IMG/VR virus record: IMGVR_UViG_3300027834_000005
Coordinates: 248,001-312,000 of that record
DNA length: 64,000 nt
Reading direction: 5' to 3' (one strand)
A program made the translations under genes and the position numbers. The notes beneath the pieces were generated by a model. It was given only the letters and a program-made list of their open reading frames with translations. It was not told the origin of the DNA and did not search any database. Shown here piece by piece: positions 579 to 7,446 of the stretch (its first letter is position 1; every line of letters starts with the position of its first letter).

Positions 579-586
579 GATAAATA
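579..586 (+). promoter_or_regulatory. late promoter motif GATAAATA upstream of tail sheath
   Basis: Resembles T4 late TATAAATA; recurs upstream of virion genes. Confidence 0.75.
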
Positions 587-620: not shown

Positions 621-3353
621 ATGGCAAATCTTGTGTCACCAGGTTCACTGGTAACAGTCACCGATGAAAGCTTTACGGTTGGTACAGGTCCAGGCACTGT
701 TCCACTTATCTTTATGGCTACGGGCCAAGATAAATTGAACTCTGCTGGGGACGGTATCGCTGAAGGAACAACAAAGCAAAATGCCGGTAAATTATTCTTA
801 ATTTCTTCTCAGAGGGAATTATTACAAACATACGGACTACCCGACTTCAATGAAGTAGGCGGTAATTCACTAAACGCATTCCCATTAAATGAATACGGTC
901 TTTTGGCTGCGCATTCATATATGGGCATTGCAAACAGAGCTTATTGCTTAAGAGCAGACGTAGATCTAGACCAAATGGTGCCTTCTGATGTGCCACCTAC
1001 TTCATCGCCTACAAGCGGAACTTACTGGTTAGATGCTAATGGCGTCGATGCTGGAATGTTCGTTAGAGCTTCTGGAACATGGGTTAAAACTTCCGTTTAC
1101 ATGTACGATGGGATCGTTGACGAAAATACTGGTGCCCCTTTAGCTGCGCCTAACAACGAAGAATATGTAATGGTTGTCGGTAAAGTGGATATCACTACCG
1201 AAATTATTGAAAACCAAATCTGGAGACAGGTTGCTGGTGTTGGATACGTTAGAATGAACGACCAAACTATCTCTGAAGATCTTCAGTATAGTAAAGTTTG
1301 GCCTTCACTTCGTAGCAACGCAACTGCTCTTGTTGACGGTGACTACTGGATTAGCACGGACATTGCTGAGTACGACTTAAGCGTTTATAGCGCGACAAGT
1401 GGTAGTTTTGTAATTCAAACTGCTCCATTATTCGAAACAACTGCATTAGCTAATGACTTCTACGGAACTCCGGTAGCTGGCGATTTGTTCGTACAGTACA
1501 ACTCTGAAGATTTAGATCCAGCAACTTCTACAGTTTTCCAACATGCTATTCGTAGACATAACGGTAAAGCTACAGTTGAAGTTATTTCTACTCATCAGTT
1601 CTCTGTAACAAACCCAATGATCGCATCTGTTAGTTTTAACGGTGGCGCACCTATCGCTATCAACGAAATTACTGCACAAGCTGCGGCATTATATATTAAC
1701 CAAGCCTTAGTAACTCAAGGTAGCACAAACATCGAAGCTAGAGATGCAAACGGAACATTAGTTATTGCTGAACTGAATGGTGATGATTTAGATATTGACG
1801 TTACAAGCGGAAGCATGGGTATCCCATCAGACGTATATAGTAACTGGGAATCTTTATCTTATGAAGCTTCTTTATCTGCTCCTATTGGTGACCTTCCAGA
1901 AGGTACGCTTTGGTATAGCGCTGATTTTAAAGCTGATGTTATCATTGCTAACAATGGTGCTTGGGAAGAACTTCCATGGCCTGTACATGTACAGCCTGAC
2001 GCTCCAACAGCTCAATTTGAAAATGAAGTATGGATTGATTCAGATCAACTTTCTGATTATCCTGTGATGTATAAGTCTGATAGCTCTCTTAAGTGGGTTC
2101 TAGTAGACAATGCTGACCAGAGTACTCCAAACGGTGCTGTATTCGCAGACGCTAGACAAGAGCCATTGTACCCAGAAGGTCCAGTAGTTCCACCTCTACC
2201 TGTTATCACTCCGTCTCAAACTGCTAACTCTTTAGATAGTGACGCGCCTGACGCATTAGCTTACCCTACTGGTATCCTATTGTTCAATACACGTTACTCT
2301 ACTCGCGTAGTTAAAGAATGGAAACATGACCATGCTTATAAAATTGGTGATGGTCCATCTGCAATTGGTGATCGTTGGACATTGAAATCTGGCTTAAGCT
2401 ATGATGGATCTTTGATTACTGGTAACGACGCTATTAAGCAAGTTGTTGTTGAAGCTATGGCTGCTGCTATTGCGAGTAACGATGACATTAGAGCTGAAGC
2501 TGTGTTCTATAACCTAATCGCTGCACCTGGATATCCTGAGTTAATGGACGAGATGGTTGCATTGAATATCGACAGAAAAGAAACTGCATTCATCCTTGGT
2601 GATACGCCAATGACATTGAAGCCAAGTGGTACTGCTCTACAAGAGTGGGCATCTAACGCTAATGTTGTTCCTTCTACTGGTGATGACGGTTTAACTACTT
2701 CTGATGAAAATTTAGGTGTGTTCTATCCTTCTGGATTAGCGACTAACTTAGACGGTAACGAAGTTGTTGTTCCTGCTTCTCATATGGAACTTAGAACTTT
2801 CGCGTATAATGATCAAGTAGCTTACCCATGGTTTGCTCCAGCTGGTCTACAACGTGGCGTTATTCAGAATGCTTCAAGTGTTGGTTATGTTGATGATGAA
2901 GGTGAATACGTTGCAGTATCCTTGAACGAAGGACAACGTGATGTACTTTATACTAACAGCCTTAACCCTATCAGAACTATTCCTAACAGTGGCGTAGTAA
3001 ACTGGGGTCAAAAAACTCGTAGTCCTGTTCCTAACAGTGCATTGTCCAGAATCAATGTGGCTCGTTTGATCAACTATATGAGATATCAATTAGATCGTTT
3101 GGTTCAGCCATTCATCTTTGAGCCTAATGACGCACAGACTCGCGGTAACGTGAAGACTGCTGTAGATTCATTCATGGCTGAGTTGGTAACTCTACGTGGC
3201 GTAACTGACTTCGTAGTTGTTTGTGATCAAAGCAATAACACTCCAGATCGTATTGATCGTAATGAGTTGTGGATTGACATCGCAATCGTGCCTACTAAAG
3301 CAATTGAATTTGTTTATATTCCTATTCGTATTAAGTCTACTGGCTCAATCTAA
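621..3353 (+). CDS. gp18: tail sheath protein (gp18-like, 910 aa with large insertion)
   Basis: N-terminal LVSPG and C-terminal sheath domain (WFAPAG..RG, INVARL, FIFEPND..TR, IDRNEL.IDIAIVPTKAIEFVYIPI); AGGAG RBS. Confidence 0.95.
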   Translation: MANLVSPGSLVTVTDESFTVGTGPGTVPLIFMATGQDKLNSAGDGIAEGTTKQNAGKLFLISSQRELLQTYGLPDFNEVGGNSLNAFPLNEYGLLAAHSYMGIANRAYCLRADVDLDQMVPSDVPPTSSPTSGTYWLDANGVDAGMFVRASGTWVKTSVYMYDGIVDENTGAPLAAPNNEEYVMVVGKVDITTEIIENQIWRQVAGVGYVRMNDQTISEDLQYSKVWPSLRSNATALVDGDYWISTDIAEYDLSVYSATSGSFVIQTAPLFETTALANDFYGTPVAGDLFVQYNSEDLDPATSTVFQHAIRRHNGKATVEVISTHQFSVTNPMIASVSFNGGAPIAINEITAQAAALYINQALVTQGSTNIEARDANGTLVIAELNGDDLDIDVTSGSMGIPSDVYSNWESLSYEASLSAPIGDLPEGTLWYSADFKADVIIANNGAWEELPWPVHVQPDAPTAQFENEVWIDSDQLSDYPVMYKSDSSLKWVLVDNADQSTPNGAVFADARQEPLYPEGPVVPPLPVITPSQTANSLDSDAPDALAYPTGILLFNTRYSTRVVKEWKHDHAYKIGDGPSAIGDRWTLKSGLSYDGSLITGNDAIKQVVVEAMAAAIASNDDIRAEAVFYNLIAAPGYPELMDEMVALNIDRKETAFILGDTPMTLKPSGTALQEWASNANVVPSTGDDGLTTSDENLGVFYPSGLATNLDGNEVVVPASHMELRTFAYNDQVAYPWFAPAGLQRGVIQNASSVGYVDDEGEYVAVSLNEGQRDVLYTNSLNPIRTIPNSGVVNWGQKTRSPVPNSALSRINVARLINYMRYQLDRLVQPFIFEPNDAQTRGNVKTAVDSFMAELVTLRGVTDFVVVCDQSNNTPDRIDRNELWIDIAIVPTKAIEFVYIPIRIKSTGSI

Positions 3354-3384
3354 TAAGTATAATATATAATAATAAGAACTTCAG

Positions 3385-3406
3385 ACCCGCTACGGCGGGT
3401 TTTTTT
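3385..3406 (+). terminator. intrinsic terminator after tail sheath
   Basis: ACCCGC-TACG-GCGGGT hairpin with a cUACGg loop, followed by a T run. Confidence 0.85.
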
Positions 3407-3410
3407 ATGC

Positions 3411-3439: not shown

Positions 3440-3468
3440 TACCGACATTATGTATTGGGAGAAATAAT

Positions 3469-3840
3469 ATGTGTATTAAAGAATACGCAATCAAAGAATT
3501 TAACGAAATTGCTTGTCTTTATGGAACAGATAAAGATGAAGGCGTGATAGAAGCCCTAATGGATAGGCTAAGCACGTTAGTAGAATATTTGTGTCTATGT
3601 AAAGAGAACCATGTTTTTACGGAAGCTGATAAAAAGCTAGTGAAAGACTTTATGGTTACAGGGTATGATCTCAAAAATGGATCTGTGGAAGATATGATTG
3701 AGCCTTTTCCAGATTATTTAGTGGTAGTGCCAATTTTGGTATTGGTGTTACGCTGGCATAAAATGCCTTTGGGAATGGCAAGCCGTGCATTCAAAGATGT
3801 CTTCCATCCTGTGTATGGCGTTTTAATACTTGATGATTAG
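3469..3840 (+). CDS. hypothetical protein
   Basis: ORF with GGAG RBS before ATG 3469 (start moved from 3421). Confidence 0.6.
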   Translation: MCIKEYAIKEFNEIACLYGTDKDEGVIEALMDRLSTLVEYLCLCKENHVFTEADKKLVKDFMVTGYDLKNGSVEDMIEPFPDYLVVVPILVLVLRWHKMPLGMASRAFKDVFHPVYGVLILDD

Positions 3841-3888
3841 CTATTAAGTTGAATATGATATATACTTGTCTAAAATTAGGAGATACCC

Positions 3889-4512
3889 ATGGATCTACAG
3901 CGTCGATATTCACCCAATGCAGTAACTACTTTACTGTCCATAAATGCAGCAGTTTTTATTTACACGTTCTTCTTCGGTAATATGATGGATTATGCCGCGT
4001 ACTCATGGGTACATGAAAGTTTCAAACTAGAAATGGTATTCACACATATGTTCGTACATAGTGGAATACTACATTTCGCATTCAATATGTTAGGTCTGTT
4101 TATGTTCGGTTCCCTAGTTGAGATGCGCTTGGGAACGGGACGATTCTATATGATGTATTTCCTCGCTGGACTATTTGCATATTTCCTCCATTGCGCGTTA
4201 GGTAGTCCCGCTGGTGGTATGGTAGGGGCATCTGGTGCCATAATGGGAGTATTAGGCGCATTCGTAGTTCTTAAGCCCAAAGAAAAGATCATCTTTATTC
4301 TGTTACCTTTTTGGCCAATCGAGGCTTGGAAGTTAATGTGTGCGTTAATGCTTATTGAGACTGTAATGGGATTTACCGGCGTCATGTCAGGTATTGGTCA
4401 CTTCGCTCATGTCGGTGGATTCATAGTAGGTGTGTCTACGATGTTAATATTGTTCGAAGGGCATAGATATATGTTAATCCATAGTATTAAGGTAATGCTT
4501 AAAAGAACTTAA
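3889..4512 (+). CDS. rhomboid family intramembrane serine protease
   Basis: Multiple TM segments; HMFVH..ILHFAFNM, catalytic GASG and AHVGG motifs; AGGAG RBS. Confidence 0.9.
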   Translation: MDLQRRYSPNAVTTLLSINAAVFIYTFFFGNMMDYAAYSWVHESFKLEMVFTHMFVHSGILHFAFNMLGLFMFGSLVEMRLGTGRFYMMYFLAGLFAYFLHCALGSPAGGMVGASGAIMGVLGAFVVLKPKEKIIFILLPFWPIEAWKLMCALMLIETVMGFTGVMSGIGHFAHVGGFIVGVSTMLILFEGHRYMLIHSIKVMLKRT

Positions 4513-4518
4513 CGATAT

Positions 4519-4541
4519 ATGGCCACTCAGATGGCCATTTT
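4519..4541 (+). terminator. possible terminator after rhomboid gene
   Basis: ATGGCCA-ctcaga-TGGCCAT hairpin followed by a short T run. Confidence 0.45.
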
Positions 4542-4570
4542 AATGCCGACTGATAAAACTCCTCCAAAGT

Positions 4571-4578
4571 GATAAATA
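4571..4578 (+). promoter_or_regulatory. late promoter motif GATAAATA upstream of tail tube
   Basis: Exact motif about 33 nt before ATG. Confidence 0.75.
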
Positions 4579-4611
4579 CTGGTAGTATATATTAACGGAG
4601 GAAAGACATAT

Positions 4612-5259
4612 ATGTCTACTTTATCAAAATTCGGTGTACAGGTTGCTCCTGGCGTTGGCGGTATTTTACAGCCTAAACTACCTTATAGATTCAGAGTTAG
4701 GTTCTATGGGTTCGGTGTATCTGGCGCAGACACATCCAAGTTAGTTCAGAATGTAGAATCATGTTCAAGACCTAAATTCAGCCAAGAACAAGTTGAAGTT
4801 CATTCTTATAATTCAAGAATTCGCGTTGGCTCTAAAGTTGACTGGGATGAATTGACCTTAGTAGTAAGAGATGACATTACGAATGGTTCTGTATCTTTAA
4901 TTGGTCAGCAAATTCAGAAACAATTTAACTTCTTTGAACAAACTAGTGCTATTGCTGGTAACGATTATAAGTTCAGAATGGAAATTGAATCATTAGACGG
5001 TACTCACGGTTCTGCTTTAGAAGTATGGAACGTAGAAGGCGCATGGTTAACAAGTGTTGAGTATGGTCAAGGCGATTACACTAGTACTAGTGAATCACAG
5101 AAAGTTACTATGACTGTTCGTTTCGACAACGCAACTCATGTATCTGGTAATAACGAGAACGTTGTGACTGATGGCGGTGATCCATTCACTCAGGAAGATC
5201 AAACCGTAATCGGTAACTTAGGTAACGCATTAGGCGGATTTGGCGATCCTACAACCTAA
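4612..5259 (+). CDS. gp19: tail tube protein (gp19-like)
   Basis: Follows sheath; YRFRV, RP..SQEQVEVH.YNS, WDELTLVVRDD, W.VEGAWLTSVEYG pattern. Confidence 0.88.
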   Translation: MSTLSKFGVQVAPGVGGILQPKLPYRFRVRFYGFGVSGADTSKLVQNVESCSRPKFSQEQVEVHSYNSRIRVGSKVDWDELTLVVRDDITNGSVSLIGQQIQKQFNFFEQTSAIAGNDYKFRMEIESLDGTHGSALEVWNVEGAWLTSVEYGQGDYTSTSESQKVTMTVRFDNATHVSGNNENVVTDGGDPFTQEDQTVIGNLGNALGGFGDPTT

Positions 5260-6575: not shown

Positions 6576-7024
6576 TGGCTGAACGATTCAGTACGCAATT
6601 CTTAAAGCAGCAAGGTGCTAGGAGGAAAACTGTTGAAGACGCAGGACGCCTAGTGAATACGTTTCAAGACAGAAAAGGTTTTGAGCACGCACTTAACGCT
6701 GCTAACACTGCATTAATGGATAAGACGTTAGTGTCTTCTTCTCTAAATTCGGAGCAATACTTTTTTGCAAAGAGTTTTTTTCAGCAAAGAGGTTTAACTG
6801 AGACCACTGCCGCGACCATGGCGGTCCTATCTATGGATGCCGCTAAAATAATGGAAGTTAGCGTTATGGTATTCTTGGAACCAATGAGAAAGAACCCTGA
6901 TGCCAATCTGGATTTTGAAGCCTACGTAGCTGCTAATTTATTCAGACCAAACTCATCGCAGCAAACATACTTATTGCAAAAAGAAAATGTTAATAGCTTG
7001 CGTAGTAGAGACATTTTACCGTGA
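6575..7024 (+). CDS. hypothetical protein (virion cluster)
   Basis: Coupled ORF (TAATG overlap). Confidence 0.65.
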   Translation: MAERFSTQFLKQQGARRKTVEDAGRLVNTFQDRKGFEHALNAANTALMDKTLVSSSLNSEQYFFAKSFFQQRGLTETTAATMAVLSMDAAKIMEVSVMVFLEPMRKNPDANLDFEAYVAANLFRPNSSQQTYLLQKENVNSLRSRDILP

Positions 7025-7446
7025 GTAAGACACTAAAAGGTTTTTTTGAAGCAAAGAATGTTGGTAAGACTGGCACACCTAGGCCATATTACAAATCTTC
7101 ATGGGAGTTAGCTTTCATGAGGATGTGTGATGAGCATCCAGCTATCGTAAGTTGGGCATATGAGCCGATTAAGATCCCATATATGAATCCCTTCACTCAT
7201 AAGAGCACAGTGTACGTACCTGATTTTCTGGTTGTCTTTGTAGATAAACAGCAGAACCAAAAAGTACAGCTCATTGAAGTAAAACCATCCAAACAAGCAC
7301 ATATTGGCAATGCTAAGTCCAAAGATGATAAGTTGCAGTTAGCACTTAATGCGTCGAAATGGGAAGCAGCCAGTAAGTATGCAAAATCACATGGTATGAC
7401 GTTCAGAATAGTAACTGAATACGATATCTATAGAAATCCAAAATAA
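7021..7446 (+). CDS. gp4: head completion nuclease (T4 gp4-like, TnsA-N PD-(D/E)XK fold)
   Basis: YKSSWE..FM..CD....I..W..E...IPY, Y.PDF, LIEVKP motifs. Confidence 0.82.
   Translation: MSKTLKGFFEAKNVGKTGTPRPYYKSSWELAFMRMCDEHPAIVSWAYEPIKIPYMNPFTHKSTVYVPDFLVVFVDKQQNQKVQLIEVKPSKQAHIGNAKSKDDKLQLALNASKWEAASKYAKSHGMTFRIVTEYDIYRNPK

What the first reader, a model, noticed from the sequence alone, without database searches (positions are those of the whole stretch)
3889..4512. Intact rhomboid intramembrane protease inserted between tail sheath and tail tube genes
A complete rhomboid with catalytic GASG Ser and AHVGG His sits with a hypothetical gene in a cassette between the sheath terminator and the tube late promoter. 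Rhomboids cut membrane-anchored substrates. In a lytic phage it could release phage membrane proteins, destroy receptors (superinfection exclusion) or cut membrane-bound defence sensors. Candidate phage substrates in the window are 50626, 52529, 45889 and 49013. The functional role is inference.
Basis: partly seen in the sequence, partly recalled or inferred. Interest (0 to 1): 0.6.

Follow-up and report, generated by a model that had tools for sequence, protein, structure and literature searches.

The report
Jumbo phage carries intact rhomboid protease
A 347-kb marine jumbo phage carries an intact, probably active rhomboid membrane protease as an add-on gene between its tail sheath and tail tube genes; such phage rhomboids are rare, have been annotated before and have never been studied, so what it cuts is unknown.

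Summary
ORF 3889-4512 (+) encodes a 207-aa protein that matches Pfam Rhomboid (E 1.8e-30). It keeps H57, H62, N66, the GASG serine (S115) and the AHVGG histidine (H174), and it models with confidence as a six-helix GlpG fold.

It sits with an ORFan gene (3469-3840) between the sheath terminator and a GATAAATA late-promoter-like motif in front of the tube gene. In 80 of 80 related viral contigs the sheath and tube genes lie 10-141 nt apart, so the cassette is a lineage-specific insertion. PA5oct and Atu_ph07 carry other genes at the same junction.

It is not a recent capture. No protein among 5.8 billion exceeds 44% identity, and GC content and codon usage match the phage. A roughly 90%-identical relative in a second marine study keeps the rhomboid without indels but lacks the ORFan.

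Rhomboids recur in phages: at least 47 IMG/VR contigs, two ~640-kb phage records, and the published DLP5/DLP3 annotations. This makes it a new member of a known, unstudied kind.

Substrate, timing of expression and role are not shown. My best guess is cleavage of single-pass inner-membrane proteins of the host.

The parts
579..586 (+). GATAAATA late-promoter-like motif, 42 nt before the sheath start
621..3353 (+). tail sheath gene (910 aa), the left border of the insertion site
   Evidence: Pfam Phage_sheath_1C and phrog_10581, E 2.6e-236. 51% identical to the PA5oct sheath.
3383..3409 (+). intrinsic terminator after the sheath gene: an 8-bp GC-rich stem followed by a T7 run
   Evidence: dG -13.8 kcal/mol, z -3.2.
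3469..3840 (+). ORFan gene (123 aa) with one hydrophobic segment at about residues 76-94. It is absent from the related phage in run X2.
   Evidence: No Pfam, PHROG, NCBIfam or PADLOC family. No relative among 5.8 billion proteins. The X2 contig joins 3450 to 3873.
3849..3876 (+). weak sigma-70-like hexamer pair (TTGAAT, 16 nt, TAAAAT; 9 of 12), at noise level
3878..3882 (+). AGGAG ribosome-binding site, 6 nt before the rhomboid ATG
   Evidence: read from the sequence
3889..4512 (+). rhomboid intramembrane serine protease gene (207 aa, six TM helices). Key residues are H57, H62, N66, S115 and H174.
4519..4538 (+). 7-bp hairpin after the rhomboid stop, with a short T-run; a weak terminator candidate
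   Evidence: dG -10 kcal/mol, z -2.05. Not called by the terminator scan.
4571..4578 (+). GATAAATA late-promoter-like motif, 41 nt before the tube start
4612..5259 (+). tail tube gene (215 aa), the right border of the insertion site
   Evidence: phrog_4542, E 1.1e-53. 385 related viral loci.

Best explanation
Shown: the gene encodes a minimal six-helix rhomboid-family intramembrane serine protease with every catalytic residue in place. It is a long-resident accessory gene of a virulent marine jumbo myovirus. It was inserted at the sheath-tube junction, where PA5oct and Atu_ph07 also carry extra genes, and it is kept in a related phage.

Inferred: once made in the infected Gram-negative cell, it inserts into the inner membrane with both ends in the cytoplasm and its active site open to the periplasmic leaflet. 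There it clips single-pass membrane proteins inside or just outside their transmembrane helix. My most likely target class is host inner-membrane proteins, so that the phage remodels the envelope proteome: blocking further infection, disabling membrane-anchored host functions or defences, or retuning secretion. The gene has no late-promoter motif, so it is probably not co-regulated with the tail genes around it.
For: Identity and fold:
- Pfam Rhomboid E 1.8e-30.
- H57, H62, N66, G113-A-S115-G and A-H174-V-G-G are invariant across 24 sequences.
- The AF2 model has pLDDT 88.7 with six long helices.
- Its best PDB matches are E. coli and H. influenzae GlpG, probability 1.0, TM 0.63-0.74.
- Charged ends (RR at the N-terminus, KxxxKR at the C-terminus) fit an in/in topology.

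Insertion:
- In 80 of 80 IMG/VR relatives the sheath-tube gap is 10-141 nt, against 1,258 nt here.
- PA5oct has a homing endonuclease at this junction and Atu_ph07 has four genes there.

Long residence and retention:
- The best identity among 5.8 billion proteins is 41-44%.
- The terminal branch is 1.2-1.8 substitutions per site.
- GC and codon usage match the phage.
- The relative in run X2 covers the whole gene at about 90% nucleotide identity with no indel, while the neighbouring ORF is deleted.

Regulation:
- The GATAAATA motif stands before the sheath and tube genes but not before the cassette.

Recurrence in phages:
- At least 47 IMG/VR contigs carry rhomboid relatives, in three synteny types.
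- The best single hit, P0005, lies on a phage-like contig.

Virulent lifestyle:
- No integrase or resolvase in the genome.
Against: No activity, substrate or transcript has been observed.

The WR motif of the L1 loop, conserved in GlpG-type rhomboids, reads E48-M49 here. This is also so in a bacterial clade that may be its sister group.

Between the two phage strains the gene diverges faster than the sheath or tube: 9-10% against 1-6%. That could mean relaxed constraint.

No convincing promoter was found. The sigma-70-like scores of 8 and 9 out of 12 are at noise level, so the timing of expression is open.

Host-directed rather than phage-directed cleavage is pure inference, and the host is unknown.
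Confidence: 0.55

Rival explanations
1. The protease matures or removes the phage's own membrane proteins, for example holin/antiholin-type lysis timers or other single-pass phage proteins, rather than host proteins.
For: The genome encodes about 49 ORFs with one hydrophobic segment and 26 with two or three. The rhomboid is the only ORF in the genome with four or more TM segments.
Against: No candidate is linked to the rhomboid by position or co-conservation. The only adjacent membrane ORF is missing in the relative that keeps the rhomboid. The candidates have no recognisable families.
Confidence: 0.2
2. It is dispensable cargo. The gene landed at a permissive junction and persists with little or no benefit, possibly drifting towards loss of activity.
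For: It is absent from all 83 more distant relatives examined. The junction also takes up selfish genes such as the PA5oct homing endonuclease. It diverges faster than its neighbours. It has a long branch, and the WR motif is absent.
Against: All five catalytic and oxyanion residues are kept despite the long branch. There is no indel across about 10% nucleotide divergence, while the neighbouring ORF was lost or gained. Composition is fully ameliorated. Rhomboids are conserved within other huge-phage lineages.
Confidence: 0.15
3. It works without cutting. It would act as a membrane adaptor or dislocation helper, as derlins and iRhoms do or as the adaptor side of B. subtilis YqgP does, handing membrane proteins to host proteases such as FtsH.
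For: Members of the rhomboid superfamily do work this way. The model also matches iRhom and derlin chains weakly.
Against: Pseudoproteases have lost the Ser/His dyad, whereas here it is intact and invariant. There is no extra soluble domain to dock a partner, since the protein is only 207 aa.
Confidence: 0.05
4. The neighbouring 123-aa ORF is the dedicated substrate or partner of the rhomboid.
For: It lies immediately upstream on the same strand. It has one hydrophobic helix containing a proline, a feature that rhomboid substrates often have.
Against: The X2 relative joins 3450 to 3873 and so lacks this ORF but keeps the rhomboid. The ORF has no relatives anywhere and no paralogue in the genome.
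Confidence: 0.05

Closest known systems
GlpG of E. coli and H. influenzae (rhomboid proteases, MEROPS S54; PDB 2ic8, 2nr9)
   Same: Six-helix core fold, a GxSG serine on TM4, a histidine on TM6 and an HxxxN on TM2. H. influenzae GlpG is similarly minimal at 192 aa.
   Different: Only 19-23% identical. It scores 39 bits against the 250-bit cut-off of the GlpG equivalog model. It has no cytoplasmic N-terminal domain, its WR motif is replaced by E-M, and it is encoded by a virus.
Annotated phage rhomboids: Stenotrophomonas phages DLP5 and DLP3 ('rhomboid membrane protein', listed as a moron gene), PHROG 16931, and BFVD entries
   Same: These are rhomboid-family genes carried by tailed phages with no known function (PMC5834331, PMC7326821).
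   Different: DLP5 and DLP3 are ~96-kb siphoviruses (DLP5 is described as temperate), and in DLP3 the gene lies close to cell-envelope sugar-modification genes. This one is in a virulent-looking jumbo myovirus, inside the tail module. They were not similar enough to be found by tblastn.
Rhomboids of huge phages (LR756502 and LR745206, ~640 kb; IMG/VR contigs of 200-480 kb)
   Same: Short (185-200 aa) catalytically intact rhomboids in very large phages, 35-44% identical to this one. In one of two trees they form a clade with it.
   Different: In several of the largest contigs examined (313-483 kb) the gene lies in a conserved block: topoisomerase IV-A, a ~120-aa ORF, the rhomboid, then an NIF-type phosphatase. 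None of those neighbours occurs in this genome. Placement in the tree depends on the model.
Rhombosortase (TIGR03902) and AarA of Providencia
   Same: Bacterial rhomboids with defined substrates (GlyGly-CTERM proteins; the TatA pre-protein) show what a small rhomboid can do in a Gram-negative inner membrane.
   Different: It scores 28 bits against the rhombosortase cut-off of 84. No GlyGly-CTERM or TatA-type partner was looked for or seen.
Hef-like homing endonuclease between the sheath and tube genes of Pseudomonas phage PA5oct
   Same: Foreign DNA inserted at the same junction in the closest cultured relative.
   Different: The cargo differs: a selfish nuclease there, a membrane protease plus an ORFan here.

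Membership tests
Rhomboid family (Pfam PF01694, MEROPS S54) | Profile match above the curated cut-off | tested here: met
   106.5 bits against 22.6, E 1.8e-30, profile positions 7-141 of 143
Rhomboid family (Pfam PF01694, MEROPS S54) | Catalytic serine in a GxSG motif on TM4 | tested here: met
   G113-A-S115-G116, invariant in 24 sequences. It aligns with the GlpG/H. influenzae active-site GxSG.
Rhomboid family (Pfam PF01694, MEROPS S54) | Catalytic histidine on TM6 in an AHxxGG context | tested here: met
   A173-H174-V-G176-G177, invariant
Rhomboid family (Pfam PF01694, MEROPS S54) | TM2 HxxxN (oxyanion hole) and the preceding conserved His | tested here: met
   H57, H62 and N66 are invariant
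Rhomboid family (Pfam PF01694, MEROPS S54) | Six-transmembrane GlpG-like fold | tested here: met
   AF2 pLDDT 88.7, pTM 0.84. Foldseek gives GlpG chains at probability 1.0, TM 0.63-0.74.
Rhomboid family (Pfam PF01694, MEROPS S54) | WR motif in the L1 loop | tested here: not met
   The positions that align with GlpG W136-R137 are E48-M49. Most relatives have W-Q, and a bacterial clade also lacks the motif. It is a common hallmark rather than a catalytic requirement.
Rhomboid family (Pfam PF01694, MEROPS S54) | Intramembrane proteolytic activity | not testable with these tools
   Needs a cleavage assay
GlpG equivalog (TIGR04239 / NF008155) | Score above the equivalog cut-off, and a cytoplasmic N-terminal domain | tested here: not met
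   39.3 bits against 250, and 37.4 against 335. There are only 10 residues before TM1.
Rhombosortase (TIGR03902) | Score above the equivalog cut-off | tested here: not met
   28.4 bits against 84
Rhomboid pseudoproteases (iRhom / derlin type) | Loss of the Ser/His dyad | tested here: not met
   The dyad is present, so this is not a pseudoprotease by sequence.
Known anti-phage defence proteins (PADLOC) | Match to any model | tested here: not met
   No match for either cassette protein

The most novel reading that the evidence does not exclude
Phage-borne rhomboids are a phage-adapted tool for intramembrane proteolysis of host proteins. They could destroy membrane-anchored defence effectors or sensors, or receptors. 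That would be a counter-defence or exclusion mechanism not yet described for any phage. The fast evolution of this copy would then reflect an arms race.
Probability: 0.12. Interest if true: 0.8.

Novelty: new member of a known kind. Interest (0 to 1): 0.45.

Why it matters
Bacterial rhomboids are nearly universal, yet only a handful have known substrates, and no phage-encoded rhomboid has been studied. In the library I searched, the only papers found that mention one are two genome descriptions.

This copy is minimal and catalytically complete. It is clearly phage-resident and is kept between strains, which makes it a good entry point for asking what a virus gains from cutting proteins inside the host membrane.

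If the targets are host proteins, it would add intramembrane proteolysis to the known means of host takeover or counter-defence. If they are phage proteins, it would be a new way of timing a membrane event such as lysis.

Tried and rejected
Searches for close relatives that found none:
- Megablast of the cassette against 50,697 phage records gave no match.
- Searches with the single protein in IMG/VR and in JGI metagenomes found only the same phage again, plus one 35% relative.
- A fragment search with residues 104-207, meant to recover the X2 allele for dN/dS, found nothing. dN/dS could therefore not be computed. Read laying lists only 40 of 292 differences, none inside the gene.

Donor and phylogeny:
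- The nearest cellular relatives are spread over many phyla at 28-45% identity.
- Tree placement flips with model and sampling. It falls with a phage clade (SH-aLRT 88) under LG+C20 with 135 rows. It is sister to a mixed bacterial/archaeal clade (99/97) under LG+G4 with 73 rows and under LG+C20 with 95 rows.
- An AU test on the large set did not finish in 576 s, so I name no donor.

Promoters:
- The sigma-70-like hexamers before both cassette genes are at noise level. I therefore dropped my first idea of an 'early host-RNAP promoter'.

The neighbouring ORF as partner:
- I rejected it as an obligatory partner because of the X2 deletion. For that reason I did not run complex prediction, since the report claims no binding.

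Other points:
- Rhombosortase and GlpG equivalog membership are both below cut-off.
- The big representative search was not used. The claim of no close relative rests on the word search, which is sensitive at 50% identity or more.
- Read laying was given 5,901 letters.

Full report
WHAT IS THERE

The window is bases 248,001-312,000 of a 347,232-bp viral record that CheckV rates 94% complete. The ORF at 3889-4512 (+) starts at an ATG, 6 nt after an AGGAG, and encodes 207 residues. It matches Pfam Rhomboid (PF01694) at E 1.8e-30, 106.5 bits against a cut-off of 22.6, and PHROG 16931, a family of unknown function.

Upstream lies the tail sheath gene (621-3353; phrog_10581, E 2.6e-236). Downstream lies the tail tube gene (4612-5259; phrog_4542, E 1.1e-53). 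The sheath is 51% identical to that of Pseudomonas jumbo phage PA5oct. The genome has no tyrosine integrase and no serine recombinase. This is therefore a virulent-looking jumbo myovirus. The DNA occurs in a marine metagenome, which is probably its source.

IS THE ENZYME INTACT?

I aligned the protein with 23 relatives. The following are invariant: T52, F55, H57, H62, N66, G113-A114-S115-G116, A173-H174 and G176-G177. These are the rhomboid catalytic serine (GxSG on TM4), the histidine (AHxxGG on TM6) and the HxxxN of TM2. In the HMMER alignment to H. influenzae GlpG (PDB 2nr9, E 1.5e-8), the TM2 HxxxN and the serine and histidine motifs line up with the corresponding GlpG motifs.

An AlphaFold2 model built on that alignment has mean pLDDT 88.7 and pTM 0.84. 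It has six long helices plus a short basic C-terminal helix. Its best matches among solved structures are about 30 GlpG chains at probability 1.0 and TM 0.63-0.74.

Only ten residues precede TM1, so this is a bare catalytic core. The basic residues at both ends fit the usual in/in topology, which is inference from the sequence.

One hallmark is missing. The L1-loop WR motif of GlpG aligns with E48-M49.

The protein is neither a GlpG equivalog (39 bits against 250) nor a rhombosortase (28 against 84). It matches no PADLOC defence model.

THE CASSETTE AND ITS BORDERS

A strong intrinsic terminator follows the sheath stop, at 3383-3402 plus seven T's (dG -13.8, z -3.2).

The octamer GATAAATA resembles the T4 late promoter; that resemblance is from my own knowledge. 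It occurs in 21 upstream regions against 1.4 expected. It sits 29-42 nt before many start codons, including the sheath's (position 579) and the tube's (position 4571). It does not occur before either cassette gene.

The sigma-70-like hexamers in front of the two cassette genes score 8 and 9 out of 12, no better than random windows. By contrast, 29% of the other upstream regions without the late motif score 10 or more, against 5% of random windows. The phage therefore seems to use host-type promoters elsewhere, but I cannot say how or when the cassette is transcribed.

A modest hairpin follows the rhomboid stop (dG -10, z -2.05).

IT IS AN INSERTION

In all 80 IMG/VR loci that carry a tube gene 40-48% identical to this one, the sheath and tube genes are 10-141 nt apart. 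In Klebsiella phage Muenster the gap is 133 nt. Here it is 1,258 nt. None of those loci has a rhomboid or a relative of the ORFan.

The same junction holds a Hef-like homing endonuclease in PA5oct, and four other genes in Agrobacterium phage Atu_ph07. The junction has therefore taken up foreign DNA more than once.

HOW OLD, AND IS IT KEPT?

Among 5.8 billion proteins, the only sequence above 44% identity is the protein itself, found on five contigs that are assemblies of the same phage.

GC content is 40.4%, against 40.0% for the genome. Synonymous codon choice has a z of -1.0 in a genome-wide distribution with mean 0.08 and sd 2.15.

In trees the protein sits on a terminal branch of 1.2-1.8 substitutions per site, three to four times the median.

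Its placement is unstable. With 135 rows and a site-heterogeneous model it joins 13 phage rhomboids, P0005 and one 3-kb MAG contig (SH-aLRT 88). With 73 rows and LG+G4 (99/97), and with 95 rows and LG+C20 (SH-aLRT 95), it is sister to a mixed bacterial/archaeal clade. It shares with that clade the F-x-x-E motif in place of WR, the A-W after the L4 proline, and GGFIVG. The two candidate sister groups are themselves neighbours (93/90). I name no donor.

The best single hit (P0005, 41%) lies on a 16-kb contig of small same-strand ORFs. These include a LAGLIDADG (faint hit), a Dam methylase and a MazG-like protein (weak hit), which is phage-like content.

The most useful datum came from reads. A marine-sediment metagenome from a different study (X2) holds a relative of this phage at depth ~100:
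- Its contigs cover the sheath with 2-6% differences.
- The tube piece shown (4732-5028) differs by 1.3%.
- The rhomboid differs by 9-10%. There is no insertion or deletion anywhere in 3873-4761.
- One contig joins 3450 directly to 3873 with a single G between.

That relative therefore has the rhomboid with its own ribosome-binding site, but lacks the 123-aa ORF. The rhomboid is the retained cargo and the ORFan is dispensable.

The higher divergence of the rhomboid can be read as relaxed constraint or as fast adaptive change. Without the allele's sequence I could not compute dN/dS. A fragment search for it found nothing.

THE NEIGHBOURING ORF AND THE PROPOSED SUBSTRATES

The 123-aa ORF (3469-3840) has a GGGAG ribosome-binding site, typical codon usage (z 0.1) and one hydrophobic stretch containing a proline. 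It has:
- no family in four libraries;
- no relative among 5.8 billion proteins;
- nothing useful in the ESM Atlas;
- no paralogue in the genome.

A hydropathy scan of 549 greedy ORF calls gives 49 ORFs with one hydrophobic segment and 26 with two or three. The rhomboid is the only ORF with four or more.

Nothing ranks them above the rest.

RHOMBOIDS IN OTHER PHAGES

A tblastn search finds 14 of 50,697 phage records. Several of these are 'UNVERIFIED_ORG' or bacterial records. Two ~640-kb uncultured phage records are genuine hits.

A two-pattern scan of IMG/VR confirms 47 contigs, including contigs of 198-483 kb. All 41 distinct proteins of normal length keep a GASG motif.

Three syntenies recur:
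- In several huge phages: topoisomerase IV-A, a ~120-aa ORF, the rhomboid, then an overlapping NIF-type phosphatase.
- In a second group: an ECF-type sigma factor, an ~80-aa ORF, the rhomboid, a two-TM ORF, then a DUF2201 metallopeptidase/VWA protein.
- In a third group: the rhomboid, followed after a 125-aa ORF by a 1,220-aa collagen-repeat protein.

BFVD holds about eight viral rhomboid-fold models, some from giant viruses.

In the literature library I searched, the only papers found that mention a phage rhomboid are the genome descriptions of Stenotrophomonas phages DLP5 and DLP3, where it is listed as a moron gene (PMC5834331, PMC7326821). Three jumbo- and huge-phage surveys, and a 2026 preprint on envelope-related proteins of large phages, do not mention rhomboids.

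HOW IT MOST LIKELY WORKS

Shown: this is an intact rhomboid-fold protein with a complete active site, encoded by a long-resident and retained accessory gene.

Inferred from what is established for GlpG, AarA, YqgP and rhombosortases: it sits in the inner membrane and cuts single-pass proteins in or near the outer leaflet.

I put most weight (about 0.55 for the whole statement, less for the target class alone) on host membrane proteins as targets. My reasons are:
- the gene is carried independently of any phage partner;
- it is not tied to the late structural programme by the late motif;
- it recurs in unrelated large phages in different contexts;
- it evolves fast.

Rivals are processing of phage membrane proteins (0.2), dispensable cargo (0.15), a non-catalytic role (0.05) and the neighbouring ORF as its substrate (0.05).

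VERDICT

It is a new member of a known but unstudied kind. It is moderately interesting as a clean test case, not a surprise in itself.

Noticed in passing
window 7021-7446 (+): A 141-aa ORF inside the tail-gene run matches the TnsA-like endonuclease N-terminal domain (PF08722, E 9.6e-23). It is probably a free-standing, homing-type nuclease, and so a second sign that this structural module takes up mobile genes.
   Followed up: partly
window 3451-3872, and position 3356: The related phage in the marine-sediment run X2 lacks these 422 nt, which hold the whole 123-aa ORF, with a single G in their place. It also lacks 3 nt just after the sheath stop. It is abundant there, at depth about 100.
   Followed up: partly
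genome-wide; in the window at 579, 4571, 8024, 12567, 28061, 29861 and other places: (T)GATAAATA(G/C)T lies 29-42 nt before many start codons (21 upstream regions against 1.4 expected). It is a T4-late-like promoter candidate for this phage lineage.
   Followed up: partly
L173:4992-6166, L177:4965-6094, L188:4881-6061: In huge phages (313-483-kb contigs among them), the rhomboid gene overlaps the start of an NIF/FCP1-type phosphatase gene (PF03031, E 1e-31 to 1e-34). It follows a topoisomerase IV-A gene and a ~120-aa ORF. This is a conserved block of unknown meaning.
   Followed up: partly
L176:3851-7841 (the same order in L175, L182, L183, L185-L187, L189, L193, L196): Another set of viral contigs has this order: an ECF-type sigma factor, an ~80-aa ORF, the rhomboid, a two-TM ORF, then a DUF2201 metallopeptidase/VWA protein. 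The arrangement is reminiscent of regulated intramembrane proteolysis of an anti-sigma factor. I did not check whether these contigs are phage or host flanks.
   Followed up: no
genome positions 226,671-229,720 (outside the window): A run of five adjacent ~130-aa ORFs, each with two or three hydrophobic segments. It could be a paralogous membrane-protein family or a lysis/holin-like cluster.
   Followed up: no
L087 (JGI24723J26617_10000007): The same phage is assembled as a 410,284-bp contig in a JGI metagenome, against 347 kb elsewhere. The extra 63 kb may be a concatemer or terminal repeat, or it may be sequence missing from the 94%-complete record.
   Followed up: no
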